Assembly: GCF_006345805.1 (NCBI RefSeq) | Contig: NC_043021.1 | Span: 23,808,001-23,872,000 of the forward strand | DNA from: Octopus sinensis | Lineage: Eukaryota | Length of the DNA stretch: 64,000 bases | Direction: 5' to 3' | Shown: one piece after another, positions 11,441 through 23,908 of the stretch | Layout of the letters: every line of letters begins with the position of its first letter | Position numbering within the stretch: the stretch's first letter is position 1 | The notes under the pieces: generated by a model | The model's database searches: none | Told to the model about the DNA's origin: nothing | Seen by the model: the letters and a program-made list of their open reading frames with translations, nothing else | Position numbers and translations under genes: made by a program

Positions 11441-11498
11441 TCAAAATCTAAAAACCAATACAAACAATTTTAAGCAATCTTTGAGCAAAAAGTTATCC
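11441..11498 (-). CDS. STC: Probable last coding exon of the stanniocalcin-like gene: (Q)DNFLLKDCLKLFVLVFRF*
   Basis: Acceptor TCTACGTTTCAG; the phase-2 frame needed by the previous exon is the longest open one; supplies the tenth Cys nine residues after YY, as in STC1 YYNRLVRSLLEC. Confidence 0.5.
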
Positions 11499-11774
11499 CT
11501 GAAACGTAGATAACGTATTGAATACATTCTGTTTAATTCGTCAATTATTGTCCAGTTTTGGCGTTGATCCATGCTGTCAACTTAGGCGCGTTTTCCGAAG
11601 TGCATTTTGAAGACATCATACCAAGATTTTTCCATAACCTGCAACGCAAAGGAATAAAGGAATATTAGTGTCTTTCTGTACCACACAGAAGCGAATTAAA
11701 ACATTTTCTGTTGTTCCTGTTTAGTCCCCAATTCAGTACAAACACTAACAGAAGTGAACTATAATCGGGGACAT

Positions 11775-12008
11775 TTCAGCGGTGAGCTGGCAGAAACGTT
11801 AGCACGCCCGGCGAAATGCTTAGCGGTATTTCATCTGCGTTACGTTGTGAGTTCAAATTCCGCCGAGGTCGACTTTGCCTTTCATCCTTTCGGGGTCGAT
11901 AAATTAAGTACCAGTTACGCACTGGGGTCGATGTAATCGACTTAATACCTATGTCTGTCCTTGTTTGTCCGCTCTGTGTTTAGCCCCTTGTGCGTAATAA
12001 AGAAATAG
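11775..12008 (+). mobile_element. tRNA-derived SINE family 2
   Basis: GGTGAGCTGGCAGAAACGTTAG...GAGTTCAAATTCC; near-identical copies at 44226-44460 (+) and 40421-40597 (-); fragments near 3665-3800 and 24560-24650. Confidence 0.85.
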
Positions 12009-12583
12009 GCGACATTTCAAATATGGCTGCCATGTCCAATTCTCAGCAATAAGGAATCTCCAGGCTACGTTATTGTGTGTAGTTTATTTTTATGACTTGT
12101 TTGAACGTTATTAGGAACTTTTGGGTATGAGCTTTTTCGTGTGTGTACAATTCTTTAAATGTTGTAGCTATGGCACAATAAAAGTAAGCATATATATACA
12201 TATGTGTGTCTGTCTACACATAGACGTATAGATGCCATTATATTCTTTATTATTTTTGTTCCTTCTTTTGCTTTAGAATAGTATACACACCTTATCTATA
12301 TTTCCTCCTTCCCCACCCCACGATAAAATTGTGCCTTAATGTTGTATGTATTGATATATTTTATAGACATGCATTAGTATTTCTTGTCGTGTGAAAAGTG
12401 TTATATGTAAATATTTGTAACCATTTATCAAATGTAGCGTTTGATGGTGTATGTATGTATGCATGTATGTACGCATGCATTCATGTATATATGTATATGT
12501 GGATACATGAACTTATGTAATATCTATATATATATATATATATATATATATATATATATACTTATGTAATATATATATATATA

Positions 12584-13267
12584 CGCGAGGGGAAATCAAA
12601 AGTTATCTGCACTTTCGTCATAACATATCTTTATTATTGTCACTTCTGCATATGCGTACTTATAGTAGAAACTATTGTGGTCACGTGATCAGAGTTTGAG
12701 CTCGATCACGCCATTTTTCTTTCTCGCTTTACAGTGTAAGCATGGCACCAAAAAAGATAAAAGAGCAGTGATCCGATTTCGCTGGAAAAGACGTATACGA
12801 TAAACAGTGCAAGATAGAATGCTTTGCTGGGCAACAAACCGAAGCCAGCAATTCGCACCAAAGGCCGATGCCTATTGTCGAAGAAAATTTTGTTGCATAA
12901 CAATGCACGCTGGGACACGACGGCCCAAACCGTTGAAAACATTAACCAATTGGGTTGCGAGTCGCTGGAATACTTGCCCACAACCCAGATTTCGCCCCTT
13001 CCAACTAACCTATACTTGGACCGCGCAAAGATGATTTACGAGGTCGATTTCCTATGGATGAAGATGTGAAGGAAGCGGTGCATAAATGGTTCCACAACCA
13101 ACCGAAAATTTTCTTCTTAGAGGGAATACAGAAGTTTGAGGACCGCTGGACGCAGTGCATCGAAAAGGAAAGAGACTATATAGAAAAATGACGTACTTCT
13201 TTATCCACTGCTTTTGGGTAAACACATTGAAAAAGCAAGTGTGCGTATAATTTTTGATTTTCCTTCG
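12584..13267 (+). mobile_element. Internally deleted mariner relic
   Basis: Inverted ends CGCGAGGGGAAATCAAAAGTT / AATTTTTGATTTTCCTTCG flanked by TA; frameshifted transposase C-terminus ILLHNNAR...DEDVKEAVHKWFHNQPKIFFLEGIQKFEDRWTQCIEKERDYIEK. Confidence 0.85.
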
Positions 13268-14056
13268 TATATATATTTACATGTATGTGTGTGCATGTGT
13301 GTATATATTGGGATTAGTTTTCAGTCGATAAGTAACAAATATTAACATCGCAATAAAGTTTTACTCAGTTTTCTTTCATTAATGTACTCATGTATTAATT
13401 TACTCCTAACAGGTCCAATTTAAGTGTTTTCTGCCAACTCCTTTCATAATGTTATATCTATTAAATGGCCGTTAGCCTCTGACTTCTGACTCCTGTGGCA
13501 TGGACCATACCATTAAACCAACCACATAACATACTACCTTCACTATTTTCCACAGTATAATTGAAACATGATGTAAACCGCAGCCTACGGATATATCTCC
13601 TGAGATTGACTTTATTTACTTACCACAGGATGAAATACCATGCATTATAATAACATCTTAAAATGAAGTCCTTACTTTTCCTTACCGTGTCTATTACATT
13701 ATTTAAAAAAAATCTATTTTACTCTATCTTATCATATTTTACCCTACTCAGCTAATCTAACAGAATTTCCCACATGATAGTTTCCTCACATTTGTACTCT
13801 CTGAAGAAGCCTTGAGGCTCAACCGTTATCCAATCTCTGTCCAACGTTTGTTCCTCCCTGTAGATCACTGAGGTGATGGGGATGACTTGGAAGATTCTGA
13901 GGCCTCATAGTAGAAAGGGCCCTAAGGGATTTGTATCTGTACACTCATCTATTATTATTCATCCATCTCTCTCTCTCTCTCTCTCTATATATATATATAT
14001 ATGTTACGTATTTATTGGCTGATCTCATTCGTTTACTTGTACCACTTAAACATATA

Positions 14057-14492
14057 CTCTTTTTTTTTTTACTTGTTTCAGTCATTTGACTGCGCCATGC
14101 TGGAGCACCGCCTTAGTCGAGCAAATCGACCCCGGGACTTATTCTTTGTAAGCCCAGTACTTATTCTATCGGTCTCTTTTGCCGAACCGCTAAGTGACGG
14201 GAAGTAAACACACACCATCGGTTGTCAAGCAATGCTAGGGGGACAAACACAGACAACACAAACACATACACACACACACATATATATATATATATATATA
14301 TATATATATATATATATATATATACATATATACGACAGGCTTCTTTCAGTTTCCGTCTACCAAATCCACTCACAGGCTTTGGTCGGCCCGAGGCTATAGT
14401 AAAAGACACTTGCCCAAGGTGCCACGCAGTGGGACTGAACCCGGAACCATGTGGTTGGTAAACAAGCTACTTACCACACAGCCACTCCTGCC
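14057..14492 (-). mobile_element. SINE family 1, full length
   Basis: Head, internal (TA)n/(TG)n and tail all present; further copies at 45378-45788 and 39728-40288 (the latter interrupted). Confidence 0.9.
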
Positions 14493-21750: not shown

Positions 21751-22034
21751 ACAATTGCAGCGTGGAAGGTGTTTATAAGCCATTTAAGAAACACACAAAA
21801 GCCGTTCGATTCACTTCAACATTTAAGTTTAATTTGTCAAAATATTTTCGTCGCTAAAATCCGCGACCTGTTCACTGACAAAGTCCGTGGTGCATCTCGG
21901 ACTTTGTCAGTGAACAGGTCGCGGATTTTAGCGACGAAAATATTTTGACAAATTAAACTTAAATGTTGAAGTGAATCGAACGGCTTTTGTGTGTTTCTTA
22001 AATGGCTTATAAACACCTTCCACGTTGCAATTGT
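21751..22034. mobile_element. Fold-back element, 137 bp arms with a 10 bp spacer
   Basis: 21751-21887 versus 21898-22034, one mismatch seen; follows (TA)n; single-arm relative at about 46338-46500. Confidence 0.9.
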
Positions 22035-22142
22035 TTTCGTTTCAGCACACGATCTCAGATCAAATTACTTGCTATGCGAGTACATCTCCGTAATATATAT
22101 ATATATATATATATATATATATATATATATATATATATATAT

Positions 22143-22548
22143 ACATCGTGACGTATATTTGCCATTTAAATATGGCTAACCCCTAAGGGTGGATGCTACT
22201 GTAGCTTGTAGCCCCAGGAGGACACCTCCTCCAGCTAGCCATAGACACACTTTCTGTGCCCTATTAGTGTTTGCAAAGGGAAGCCATCCTTCCCGTCTTC
22301 AACTTATGATACACACGGACTCGAGTTTCTGAATATTGACCCGTCATCGGCGTGTGACAATCACAGTTGTCGATGAGAAGTCGGTTCCCTTCACAAACAC
22401 TTATACTTTTCCCTTTGCAAACACTGATAGGGCACAGTAAGTGTGTCTATGGCCAGCTGGAGGAGGTGTCCTCCTGGGGCTACAAACTACAGTAGCATCC
22501 ACCCTTAGGGGTTAGCCATATTTAAATGGCATATATACGTCACGATGT
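22143..22548. mobile_element. MITE-like element with about 140 bp inverted repeats
   Basis: ACATCGTGACGTATA...TTTGCAAAGGGAA (22143-22282) versus TTCCCTTTGCAAA...TATACGTCACGATGT (22409-22548). Confidence 0.8.
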
Positions 22549-22979
22549 GTTGTAGCTACTATTTATAACTAGCTCTGAGATTTATTATATATATATATAT
22601 ATATATATATATATATATATATATATATATTATATATATATATATATATATATATCAATTAATATGAAAATATGTATTAATGGAAAACCTCTATAAATGT
22701 CTGATGATTGCTCAACATTTTAAAACTGCTGTAATACTTACAATGTTTAATAAAATGATGTAGCGTGAAACGATCGTACCAAATAACCGAAGATATTCTT
22801 GTTGCTTATTTTGATTATATATATATATATATTTACATGTATGTATGTATGTGTGTATATACTCACACTCACACACATGTATATATATATATACACAAGG
22901 TGATGCACTGGTGATGCATTGGTGAATAGCCAACAGCGTTAGAGAGTATGAATATTTAATTTATAGTTGAGAAAAAGTT

Positions 22980-23680
22980 AGCTTACTTGGAGGAGTGAAA
23001 GCTATCTGACATTGTAAAAGCTGTAAGACGTGACATGAACGGTCTCAACGGCGGCTACTAAGTTGTGAGCTGTGATCAGCTGAAGGGACACATCAGCAGA
23101 CTTTCTGACTGCGTTCGTACGCCGAAATTTCTCCCACATCTCCAAACAGGGACTGAGATTCAATTTAGACGGCTATCTGAATCTGCTCGAGAATGTGGTA
23201 AATCCCTGGCTGGAGGATTTTTTTACTGGAAGCCCATACATGTAGAAACAGGGCTCAGCTCCTTGCCATATCTTCAAGAAGAGTCAGAATTGGTTGTCGG
23301 AGACTTTCTGCGTCTTTACCAGCCCTAATTTCTGGGCCTCCTAGTTCTTTACGATTATGATCTCATGGATTACTATGTTCGAGTGCGGTGGAGACAGACG
23401 CCACACGCTCTGCGTGCAACTCCAAGGCCTCGTCCATGGCCAAGATGAAGGTGTTCGAAGATCTTCTCAGAGACACAGTGAGGTACGTATGTACCAGATG
23501 CTGCAGCCGTCTTAAGGCCTTAGTGAAAGGCGAGGGAGGTTATTTTGAGTAAAGTGTTATTTGCCAGCAATATTCTAGTTGATATTTTTGGATTTTTTAA
23601 AAGGTAATTTATTTTTAGATGAGATATTTTGTCTTCTACTTTTATGGAAGCTGTTAAATTTAGCCCAAACACCCTCTACA
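22980..23680 (+). mobile_element. Decayed Tc1/mariner-superfamily transposase relic
   Basis: Frameshifted NVVNPWL...SAPCH...SQNWLSETF...degenerate WPPSSPDLNPMDY-like motif...GEGGYFE*; boundaries approximate. Confidence 0.75.
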
Positions 23681-23747
23681 AACTTTATTCACTCTTTCTC
23701 ATTCTATTTCTCACGCACAATTCTTTCCACTTAGGAATTTCACTTAC

Positions 23748-23908
23748 TACATCATTCAAAGTTTTTGCCACTGCCACATCTTCTTTACAATGTTTATACG
23801 GGTTTTCCATTCCCATGTGTTCTTTATGACAAGGGTACCTCTTATCCAAACACTCGTAAAATCTGCAGTCGATGTTTTCACTATATTTGAGACATTCGGG
23901 AGTAACTT
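23748..23908 (-). CDS. STC: Stanniocalcin-like gene, internal exon (161 nt, phase 1 to phase 0)
   Basis: Strong acceptor TTTCTTTTGTTCTTTCTTTTTCAG, donor GTAAGT; VTPECLKYSENIDCRFYECLDKRYPCHKEHMGMENPYKHCKEDVAVAKTLNDV; splices in frame to the 18525 exon. Confidence 0.9.

What the first reader, a model, noticed from the sequence alone, without database searches (positions are those of the whole stretch)
11441..23908. Hidden stanniocalcin-family hormone gene on the minus strand
Seen: two exons with canonical splice sites join in frame, and with the candidate last exon give Cys spacing 8-4-6-13-23-15-13-6-35. Human STC1, from memory, is 8-4-5-8-23-15-13-6-34. The intron phases 1, 0, 2 and the DV|GK junction match what I recall for STC1 (TQ|GK). 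If the last exon is right, the protein stops before the C-terminal dimerisation Cys and lacks the NST glycosylation site, suggesting a monomeric form. Invertebrate stanniocalcins are known to exist but are poorly characterised. No signal-peptide exon was found, so intron 1 may exceed 40 kb and contain the Gypsy, Dong, Penelope and Tx1 insertions.
Basis: partly seen in the sequence, partly recalled or inferred. Interest (0 to 1): 0.7.

Follow-up and report, generated by a model that had tools for sequence, protein, structure and literature searches.

The report
Octopus stanniocalcin-like gene, already annotated
The window holds three of the four exons of a real, intact octopus gene for a secreted stanniocalcin-fold protein; it is already predicted in RefSeq (unnamed), and it is one of a fast-diverging tandem family found only in octopods rather than the conserved hormone gene.

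Summary
They have canonical splice sites and join in frame. The spliced peptide hits Pfam Stanniocalcin (E 9e-11).

The window is Octopus sinensis chromosome CM016883.1. The gene is RefSeq LOC118767950, an "uncharacterized protein" of 195 aa, so it is unnamed rather than hidden.

The true exon 4 is 11638-11545, is conserved in all cephalopod homologues, and carries Cys10. The Cys spacing is therefore 8-4-6-13-23-15-13-6-39.

The protein has 10 Cys, no 11th Cys and no N-glycosylation sequon. Its AlphaFold model (pLDDT 90.8) matches only STC2 in the PDB.

It does not belong to the canonical cephalopod stanniocalcin group. It sits in an octopod-only clade, and O. sinensis has at least three same-strand copies within about 250 kb. 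Against the nearest copy, exon 1 is 94% identical (omega 0.12), while exons 2-3 are 50% identical (omega 0.83) with every Cys kept.

A 2026 preprint reports stanniocalcin-like proteins highly expressed in octopus posterior salivary (venom) glands. Whether this copy is one of them was not testable here.

Verdict: a new member of a known kind, of moderate-low interest.

The parts
23748..23908 (-). Coding exon 2 of LOC118767950 (161 nt). It encodes (E)VTPECLKY...AKTLNDV and carries Cys1-Cys5. Entry phase is 1 and exit phase is 0.
   Evidence: It matches P0001 residues 35-89 by tblastn. Homologues' alignments end at the same boundary.
18299..18525 (-). Coding exon 3 (227 nt). It encodes GKIWMDSIIKC...QEYYI(Q) and carries Cys6-Cys9. 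Exit phase is 2.
   Evidence: On its own it hits PF03298 with E 7.4e-07.
11545..11638 (-). True coding exon 4 (94 nt). It encodes (Q)LWKNLGMMSSKCTSENAPKLTAWINAKTGQ followed by the stop, and carries Cys10. The stop TAA is at 11547-11545.
   Evidence: It is conserved in Argonauta P0003 (50% identity), O. bimaculoides P0011/P0013/P0014/P0120 and O. vulgaris P0004. It is 82% identical at the amino-acid level to the paralogue P0153.
11532..11537 (-). ATTAAA, a possible polyadenylation signal 8 nt after the stop codon.
   Evidence: Read. It is conserved at the same alignment columns in the paralogue LOC115224535. This is a consensus match only; its function is inferred.
11441..11498 (-). Rejected: it is 3' flank or UTR, not coding.
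   Evidence: It lies after the stop and after ATTAAA. No homologue aligns to it. Its acceptor AG is GG in the paralogue.
18526..23747 (-). Intron 2 (5,222 bp). Its first 340 bp (23747-23408) are 97.4% identical to the same place in the paralogue LOC115224535.
11639..18298 (-). Intron 3 (6,660 bp). It holds antisense LINE tail fragments (zf-RVT at 15372-15785 and 16571-17389, + strand) and long TATC/ATCT microsatellites.
23909..64000 (-). The 3' 40,092 bp of intron 1, whose total length is 44,813 bp. Exon 1 (MWRFLAVLLMSFVLAIKGFYFHTELNPDRVIKAKA) would lie at about 68,722-68,827, outside the window. This stretch holds antisense LINE ORFs at 35503-36552, 49932-53357 and 56308-59531.

Best explanation
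SHOWN
- Window 11545-23908 (minus strand) holds coding exons 2-4 of Octopus sinensis LOC118767950. Exon 1 lies about 4.8 kb beyond the window end.
- The four-exon gene spans 57.3 kb and encodes a 195-aa precursor.
- The precursor starts with a textbook signal peptide (MWRFLAVLLMSFVLAIKG).
- The mature protein is about 177 aa and 21 kDa, all-alpha, and has the ten-cysteine stanniocalcin scaffold.
- It has no 11th Cys, so it lacks the Cys that disulfide-links vertebrate STC1 dimers. It has no N-glycosylation sequon, no equivalent of STC2 Cys120, and only 18 residues after Cys10.
- It is not the conserved cephalopod stanniocalcin. It belongs to an octopod-only clade that grew by tandem duplication. 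O. sinensis has at least three same-strand copies within about 250 kb, and O. bimaculoides has at least five loci on one scaffold.
- Against its nearest copy, 30 kb downstream, the signal/pro exon is held constant, while the exons for the disulfide core change at nearly the silent-site rate with every Cys fixed.

INFERRED
- It is secreted as a monomer and acts outside the cell as a stanniocalcin-like ligand or binder.
- Its surface is diversifying on a fixed scaffold.
- Because stanniocalcin-like proteins are reported as highly expressed secreted products of octopus posterior salivary (venom) glands, an exocrine or salivary role is more likely than a conserved endocrine one. This was not tested for this copy.
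For: Gene identity:
- 100% identity to P0001.
- Exon mapping and canonical splice sites.

Family membership:
- PF03298 at 50.2 bits against a cut-off of 23.
- STC2 is the only PDB sequence match, E 1.2e-05.
- The ten Cys are invariant across 20 homologues, and all ten align with human STC1 Cys1-Cys10.
- The AlphaFold model has pLDDT 90.8.
- The top four Foldseek hits are all STC2 in PAPP-A complexes, probability 1.00 and TM 0.50-0.60. The next hit has probability 0.14.

Clade placement:
- Neighbour-joining trees put it in an octopod-only group with bootstrap 82 and 75.
- The canonical group (Argonauta P0003, P0122, P0007) is separate, with bootstrap 96 and 84.
- The gene pairs with LOC115224535 at bootstrap 99.

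Tandem array:
- The three O. sinensis copies are located.

Evolutionary rates against LOC115224535:
- Exon 1 omega 0.12, exon 2 omega 1.09, exon 3 omega 0.71.
- All 9 Cys in exons 2-3 are kept although half the residues differ, p = 0.0015.
- Exons 2-3 are no more conserved than the flanking introns.

Venom-gland context:
- bioRxiv 10.64898/2026.02.02.703354.
Against: - No expression evidence could be obtained here. No RNA-seq was available, no transcript-derived copy of the exact protein is in the protein collection, and the gene range on record has no UTRs.
- Omega near 1 across exons 2-3 also fits relaxed constraint.
- The neighbouring copy LOC118767942 carries a premature stop in this assembly, so some members of the array may be decaying.
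- The preprint names O. bimaculoides and H. maculosa proteins only, and its sequence file is not held. The link between this copy and the salivary-gland set is by family only.
- Mosaic identity between the paralogues shows gene conversion, which distorts pairwise dS and omega.
- The trees are neighbour-joining on 121-150 columns.
Confidence: 0.85

Rival explanations
1. It is the octopus counterpart of the vertebrate stanniocalcin hormone. On this view it is an endogenous endocrine or paracrine regulator of calcium/phosphate handling or of pappalysin activity.
For: It has the same fold and the same ten-Cys scaffold as STC1/STC2. It has a signal peptide. It has four coding exons, as human STC1 and STC2 do (PMC11625730, PMC8806499). 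Stanniocalcins are known in molluscs (PMC5654410).
Against: - A separate, more conserved cephalopod stanniocalcin exists, with a C-terminal helical tail (P0003, P0122; 51% identical between distant octopods).
- The window gene groups away from that protein.
- The closest O. bimaculoides relative found is under 48% identical over the core.
- Omega is about 0.8-1.1 in the core exons, which is not how a conserved hormone evolves.
- Invertebrate stanniocalcins lack STC2 Cys120, and their interaction with the invertebrate pappalysin is considered unlikely (PMC11925022).
Confidence: 0.2
2. It is a silent or decaying duplicate: a recently copied stanniocalcin-like gene that still has an open frame but is no longer used.
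For: - Omega is near 1 in exons 2-3.
- Intron 1 is 44.8 kb and swollen with LINE insertions, against 3.7 kb in the paralogue.
- A neighbouring array member has a premature stop.
- No transcript-derived copy of the protein is on record.
Against: - The frame is intact across four exons and all six splice sites are canonical.
- All ten Cys are kept, p = 0.0015 for the nine in exons 2-3.
- Exon 1 has omega 0.12 and exon 4 is 82% identical, while their flanks are 70-82% identical.
- The structure model is confident.
- The paralogues that the preprint implies are highly expressed in O. bimaculoides are also missing from the transcript-derived collection, so that absence says little.
Confidence: 0.13
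3. The transcript would splice from 18299 to 11498 and end at 11441, giving a protein with the tenth Cys in ...DNFLLKDC....
For: An AG with a moderate pyrimidine tract precedes 11498. The resulting spacing of 35 resembles human STC1's 34.
Against: - An upstream acceptor at 11638 gives an exon that is conserved in all cephalopod homologues and is the one in the RefSeq protein.
- Its AG is GG in the paralogue.
- No homologue matches its peptide.
Confidence: 0.02

Closest known systems
Human stanniocalcin-2 (PDB 8a7e/8a7d/7y5q/8hgh) and stanniocalcin-1
   Same: It has the same all-alpha fold. Cys1-Cys9 align in the HMMER alignment to STC2, and all ten align with STC1. It is secreted and has four coding exons.
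   Different: - Core identity is about 17-19%.
- There is no 11th Cys for the interchain disulfide, no N-glycosylation sequon, and Ala in place of STC2 Cys120, the residue that links covalently to PAPP-A.
- The C-terminal region is much shorter: 18 residues after Cys10.
Canonical molluscan/cephalopod stanniocalcin (Lottia STC of Roch & Sherwood 2011, PMC5654410; Argonauta hians GAB1608148 = P0003; P0122)
   Same: It has the ten-Cys pattern and a very similar signal/pro exon (MWKFFTVLVLSLALTAEG|WFF... against MWRFLAVLLMSFVLAIKG|FYF...). Exon boundaries are the same, and the LWKN.G..S.KC motif in exon 4 is shared.
   Different: Identity is 35-36% over the core. It lacks the roughly 25-residue amphipathic tail after Cys10. 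It falls in a different clade.
O. sinensis LOC115224535 (P0153), the tandem paralogue 30 kb downstream
   Same: It is the sister gene (bootstrap 99), on the same strand, with the same four-exon structure and splice-site contexts. Exon 1 is 94% and exon 4 is 82% identical. A 340-bp tract of intron 2 is 97% identical.
   Different: Exons 2-3 are only 50% identical at the protein level. The paralogue's gene is 16.6 kb against 57.3 kb, because its intron 1 is 3.7 kb rather than 44.8 kb.
Cephalopod posterior-salivary-gland 'stanniocalcin doppelganger toxins' (superfamily SF5; Koch et al., bioRxiv 10.64898/2026.02.02.703354)
   Same: They are octopod secreted proteins that run from the signal peptide to the C-terminus as a single stanniocalcin domain, with a predicted fold overlaying human STC2.
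   Different: They are described for O. bimaculoides and H. maculosa only. Their sequences and accession numbers were not available here. Expression of the O. sinensis gene is unknown, so membership is open.

Membership tests
Stanniocalcin family (Pfam PF03298 / InterPro IPR004978) | Profile score above Pfam's gathering threshold | tested here: met
   The full protein scores 50.2 bits, E 2.7e-13, against a cut-off of 23. The spliced window peptide scores 41.9 bits.
Stanniocalcin family (Pfam PF03298 / InterPro IPR004978) | Conserved pattern of ten cysteines (the criterion of Roch & Sherwood 2011, PMC5654410) | tested here: met
   There are ten Cys, at residues 41, 50, 55, 62, 76, 100, 116, 130, 137 and 177. 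They are invariant in a 20-sequence alignment. Nine of them also align in the tool's alignment to STC2.
Stanniocalcin family (Pfam PF03298 / InterPro IPR004978) | N-terminal signal peptide (secreted protein) | tested here: met
   This was judged by inspection only; no dedicated predictor was available. The sequence is MWR plus a 13-residue hydrophobic core plus KG, which aligns with the signal peptides of homologues before a conserved G|[FW][FY]F. This exon lies outside the window.
Stanniocalcin family (Pfam PF03298 / InterPro IPR004978) | Stanniocalcin three-dimensional fold | tested here: met
   The AlphaFold model has pLDDT 90.8 and pTM 0.78. The only significant PDB matches are four STC2 chains, probability 1.00 and TM 0.50-0.60.
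Stanniocalcin family (Pfam PF03298 / InterPro IPR004978) | Four-exon gene with intron positions shared with vertebrate STC1/STC2 | tested here: inconclusive
   There are four coding exons with phases 1, 0 and 2, and the boundaries are shared by all cephalopod paralogues. Human STC1 and STC2 have four exons (PMC11625730, PMC8806499). Whether the intron positions are equivalent to the human ones rests on memory and was not tested.
Vertebrate-type dimeric glycoprotein hormone STC1/STC2 | 11th cysteine forming the interchain disulfide | tested here: not met
   There are only ten Cys, and the protein ends 18 residues after Cys10.
Vertebrate-type dimeric glycoprotein hormone STC1/STC2 | Conserved N-glycosylation sequon | tested here: not met
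   There is no N-x-S/T anywhere in the protein.
Vertebrate-type dimeric glycoprotein hormone STC1/STC2 | STC2 Cys120, which bonds covalently to PAPP-A | tested here: not met
   The aligned position is Ala111 (alignment). This agrees with PMC11925022 for invertebrate stanniocalcins in general.
Canonical cephalopod/molluscan stanniocalcin orthologue group | Groups with Argonauta P0003 / P0122 / P0007 in a tree and keeps the helical tail after Cys10 | tested here: not met
   It falls in the separate octopod-only clade (bootstrap 82 and 75), while the canonical clade has bootstrap 96 and 84. The tail is absent.
Cephalopod salivary-gland stanniocalcin-like toxins (SF5, Koch et al. 2026 preprint) | Secreted single-domain stanniocalcin homologue of an octopod | tested here: met
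Cephalopod salivary-gland stanniocalcin-like toxins (SF5, Koch et al. 2026 preprint) | High expression in the posterior salivary gland | not testable with these tools
   No RNA-seq or proteome data are accessible. No paper mentions the locus.
Cephalopod salivary-gland stanniocalcin-like toxins (SF5, Koch et al. 2026 preprint) | Clusters by sequence with the published SF5 members | not testable with these tools
   The preprint's sequence file is not held, and no accession numbers appear in the text.

The most novel reading that the evidence does not exclude
This gene is a young, lineage-specific member of an octopod tandem array. In this reading, the stanniocalcin scaffold has been recruited as an exocrine (venom or saliva) protein. 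The array would evolve like classic toxin families, with a conserved signal/pro exon, a rapidly diversifying mature core on a fixed five-disulfide frame, gene birth and death, and local gene conversion. It would act on prey stanniocalcin targets rather than on the octopus's own physiology.
Probability: 0.3. Interest if true: 0.55.

Novelty: new member of a known kind. Interest (0 to 1): 0.3.

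Why it matters
Stanniocalcins still lack an agreed receptor, and their role in invertebrates is unknown.

An octopod-specific array of short, unglycosylated, probably monomeric stanniocalcin-like proteins is a natural set of variants on one scaffold. If some are salivary-gland products, as a recent preprint reports for other octopus species, they could serve as probes for what stanniocalcins bind.

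For genome annotation, this locus and its neighbours deserve the name 'stanniocalcin-like'. Two neighbouring public models need repair: a chimeric O. vulgaris model and a two-domain O. bimaculoides model.

None of this overturns current knowledge. The gene is already predicted, molluscan stanniocalcins have been known since 2011, and the venom-gland link has already been published as a preprint.

Tried and rejected
- I searched the window for exon 1 by tblastn with word size 2 and found nothing. It was then located outside the window through the RefSeq locus.
- I searched the window for a second stanniocalcin paralogue using 12 homologues. Only the one set of exons was found.
- Two word-index homologue searches with other queries added little. 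The canonical Argonauta protein returned only itself. The paralogue domain returned only P0153. The profile-free scan of all representatives was what revealed the family.
- I tried to tie the gene to the published salivary-gland set. The preprint's supplements are not held, it gives no accession numbers, and no paper cites the LOC identifiers.
- A literature search for vertebrate or amphioxus intron positions found nothing usable.
- Rfam and tRNA scans of the whole window found nothing.
- Pfam scans of 29 window ORFs of at least 120 aa confirmed only LINE-type domains: AP endonuclease, reverse transcriptase and zf-RVT.
- A formal test for positive selection was not possible with two coding sequences. 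Pairwise omega is reported only as descriptive.

Full report
**1. What is in the sequence**

On the minus strand, the stretch 23908-23748 follows a long pyrimidine tract and AG, and is followed by GTAAGT. The stretch 18525-18299 follows ...cctttacAG and is followed by GTAAGT.

- The first stretch translates to VTPECLKYSENIDCRFYECLDKRYPCHKEHMGMENPYKHCKEDVAVAKTLNDV.
- The second translates to GKIWMDSIIKCFMTKMAEIYKAETIDCTTVVDKVKDIQRHCYISNDFCGVGWDNRHVLWKMFERKVTETKQEYYI.

The second exon alone gives 29.2 bits. This is not chance.

**2. Where it comes from, and the true gene model**

A homologue search returned one protein that is 100% identical: NCBI 'uncharacterized protein LOC118767950 [Octopus sinensis]', 195 aa, with PF03298 already precomputed (sequence).

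Its residues map onto the window as follows:

| Protein residues | Window coordinates |
|---|---|
| 35-89 | 23912-23748 |
| 90-165 | 18525-18298 |
| 165-195 | 11640-11548 |

The real last coding exon is therefore 11638-11545. It is preceded by cctttattcctttgcgttgcAG, encodes (Q)LWKNLGMMSSKCTSENAPKLTAWINAKTGQ, and ends at TAA 11547-11545.

Three things count against it:

- No homologue aligns to it, whereas the true exon 4 aligns with the last exon of Argonauta, O. bimaculoides and O. vulgaris relatives.
The true spacing is 39, giving 8-4-6-13-23-15-13-6-39.

Exon 1 (MWRFLAVLLMSFVLAIKGFYFHTELNPDRVIKAKA plus one base) is not in the window. The RefSeq locus (L001, CM016883.1, gene range 57,283 bp) contains the reverse complement of the window from offset 14,827. 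That places exon 1 about 4.8 kb beyond window position 64000.

- Exon 1 ends ...GCAG|GTGAGT, which is phase 1.
- Concatenating the four exons reproduces the 195-aa protein exactly.
- All six splice sites are canonical.
- The introns are 44,813, 5,222 and 6,660 bp.

**3. Family membership**

- The full protein scores 50.2 bits on PF03298.
- Against all PDB sequences, the only matches are human stanniocalcin-2 chains (E 1.2e-05). Nine Cys align, and Ala sits where STC2 has Cys120.
- In a 20-sequence alignment of homologues, the only invariant columns are the initiator Met, the ten Cys and one Tyr.
- All ten Cys align with Cys1-Cys10 of human STC1.
- An AlphaFold model built on that alignment is confident (pLDDT 90.8, pTM 0.78) and all-alpha.
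- Foldseek against the PDB returns four STC2 chains from PAPP-A complexes at probability 1.00 and TM 0.50-0.60. Nothing else exceeds probability 0.14.

The ten-Cys pattern is the criterion used to define stanniocalcins across eukaryotes, including a mollusc (PMC5654410). Membership in the stanniocalcin family is therefore established.

The protein has no 11th Cys, no N-x-S/T sequon and only 18 residues after Cys10. Most invertebrate stanniocalcins share these traits (PMC5654410, PMC11925022), so they do not mark this protein as a special form.

**4. It is not the conserved stanniocalcin of cephalopods**

A scan of 1.84 billion representative proteins found 119 relatives. Naming them shows two kinds of cephalopod protein.

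*The canonical kind.*
- Members are Argonauta hians GAB1608148 = P0003, and P0122/P0011 and P0007 from transcript assemblies.
- These are 214-222 aa long and carry a helical tail after Cys10.
- They are fairly conserved: 51% identity between P0122 and Argonauta.

*The shorter, divergent kind, found only in octopods.*
- O. sinensis: LOC118767950 (this gene), LOC115224535 and LOC118767942.
- O. bimaculoides: LOC106876190, LOC106876188, LOC128250809, LOC128250800 and LOC128250786, all on one 35.5-Mb scaffold.
- O. vulgaris: CAI9741007, CAI9741011 and CAI9741013 on one chromosome, and CAI9734732 on another.
- Argonauta: GAB1608149, whose accession number is adjacent to the canonical gene's.

Neighbour-joining trees with bootstraps support this split:

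| Grouping | Bootstrap (the two trees) |
|---|---|
| Canonical group | 96 / 84 |
| Octopod-only group, including this gene | 82 / 75 |
| This gene paired with LOC115224535 | 99 (second tree only) |

The closest O. bimaculoides relative found is 47.7% identical over the core.

On O. sinensis chromosome CM016883.1, three copies lie on the same strand:

| Gene | Position on CM016883.1 |
|---|---|
| LOC118767942 | 24.007-24.027 Mb |
| LOC118767950 (this gene) | 23.820-23.877 Mb |
| LOC115224535 | 23.773-23.789 Mb |

The gaps between them are about 130 kb and 30 kb.

**5. How it is evolving**

Comparison with LOC115224535 (P0153) gives these amino-acid identities and Nei-Gojobori omega values:

| Exon(s) | Amino-acid identity | Omega |
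|---|---|---|
| 1 | 94% | 0.12 |
| 2 | 54% | 1.09 |
| 3 | 47% | 0.71 |
| 4 | 82% | not computed (dS = 0) |
| 2+3 | 50% | 0.83 (dN 0.33, dS 0.40) |

- Half of the 130 residues in exons 2-3 differ, yet all nine Cys are kept, hypergeometric p = 0.0015.
- Exons 2-3 are no better conserved than their intron flanks, while exons 1 and 4 are much better conserved than theirs.
- The first 340 bp of intron 2 are 97.4% identical between the two genes and occur nowhere else in the three loci. Another intron-1 segment is 95.7% identical.

The pair is therefore a mosaic shaped in part by gene conversion, and pairwise rates should be read as descriptive.

The overall pattern is a constant signal/pro region with a fast-changing mature core on a fixed disulfide frame, in a family that gains and loses copies. 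This is typical of diversifying secreted protein families. It also partly fits relaxed constraint.

**6. Likely function**

Shown:
- It is an intact gene for a secreted protein of about 21 kDa with the five-disulfide stanniocalcin fold.

Inferred:
- It is monomeric, because it lacks the interchain Cys.
- It acts extracellularly as a stanniocalcin-like binder.

In vertebrates, stanniocalcins reduce calcium uptake and inhibit the pappalysin proteinases (PMC5654410, PMC11925022). The covalent STC2 mechanism is excluded here because Cys120 is absent.

A 2026 preprint lists stanniocalcin-like proteins (superfamily SF5) among highly expressed secreted transcripts of the posterior salivary glands of O. 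bimaculoides and Hapalochlaena maculosa. It calls them hormone-mimicking toxins and notes that stanniocalcins are absent from arthropods.

The octopod-only expansion found here is the obvious source of such proteins, so an exocrine role for this copy is plausible (I put it at roughly 0.3-0.4). It is untested, however. The preprint's sequences are not held, no paper mentions this locus, and no expression data were reachable.

Two rivals remain open:
- An endogenous signalling role (about 0.2).
- A silent or decaying duplicate (about 0.13). This is supported by the LINE-swollen 44.8-kb intron 1, against 3.7 kb in the paralogue, and by a premature stop in the neighbouring LOC118767942.

**7. Surroundings**

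The introns hold retroelement ORFs on the plus strand, antisense to the gene.

Intron 1:
- A LINE with AP endonuclease and reverse transcriptase at 49932-52265, with its zf-RVT tail at 52302-53357.
- A second LINE at 56308-59531.
- A reverse transcriptase fragment at 35503-36552.

Intron 3:
- zf-RVT tails at 15372-15785 and 16571-17389.

Long TATC/ATCT and dinucleotide microsatellites fill intron 3. A triplet-repeat run directly follows the 3' end. There are no Rfam or tRNA matches in the window.

**8. Verdict**

The last exon is wrong, and 'hidden' is wrong.

The gene is already predicted in RefSeq, although unnamed. Molluscan stanniocalcins have been known since 2011, and the cephalopod venom-gland connection was published in 2026. 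What this analysis adds:
- A corrected model.
- Placement in an octopod-specific tandem array distinct from the canonical gene.
- The contrast between the conserved signal exon and the fast-changing core.

It is a new member of a known kind, of moderate-low interest.

Noticed in passing
window 23408-23747 (-); L003 13926-14265: The first 340 bp of intron 2 are 97.4% identical to the same position in the paralogue LOC115224535. The adjacent exon 2 interior is only 60-76% identical, and other intron flanks are 70-80%. The tract occurs nowhere else in the three loci. It is probably a recent gene-conversion tract, less likely a conserved intronic element.
   Followed up: partly
L002 29340-29573 (O. 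sinensis LOC118767942, about 130 kb upstream of this gene): Exon 3 has an in-frame stop where the O. vulgaris orthologue (P0133) has Ser. The O. sinensis model therefore ends at 160 aa without the exon that carries Cys10. This could be a decaying copy, a polymorphism or an assembly error.
   Followed up: no
P0002 (O. vulgaris CAI9741011) and P0120 (O. bimaculoides XP_052832787): Both public models hold two stanniocalcin domains. P0002 joins the exon-2 orthologue of the window gene to exons 2-4 of the next paralogue, over a 102-kb gene range. These look like fused neighbouring genes rather than real two-domain proteins.
   Followed up: partly
P0003 and P0026 (Argonauta hians GAB1608148 and GAB1608149): A canonical stanniocalcin and an expanded-type paralogue have adjacent accession numbers on one contig. 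This suggests the expansion began as a tandem duplication beside the canonical gene, before Argonauta and Octopus split.
   Followed up: partly
P0008, P0009, P0010 (Branchiostoma): These amphioxus models carry two stanniocalcin domains, fused to a phospholipase-A2-like module (P0008), to a lysozyme-g module (P0010), or followed by a Cys-rich C-terminal region (all three). They may be real multidomain secreted proteins or merged gene models.
   Followed up: no
window 49932-53357, 56308-59531, 35503-36552 (+); 15372-15785 and 16571-17389 (+): LINE-type ORFs (AP endonuclease, reverse transcriptase, zf-RVT) lie in introns 1 and 3, all antisense to the gene.
   Followed up: partly
window 11246-11375 with the run to about 11420; 16524-16897; 17911-18198; 14611-14786: There are long microsatellites: TAT/AAC-type triplets directly after the gene's 3' end, and TATC/ATCT arrays of 44-94 copies in intron 3. 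They generate spurious long ORFs such as 10791-11444 and part of 16571-17389.
   Followed up: yes
window 5445-6239 (-), 41780-42769 (+), 47617-48399 (+), 48632-49465 (+): These ORFs of 260-329 aa have no Pfam match. They could be retroelement ORF1/gag-like remnants or chance frames.
   Followed up: no
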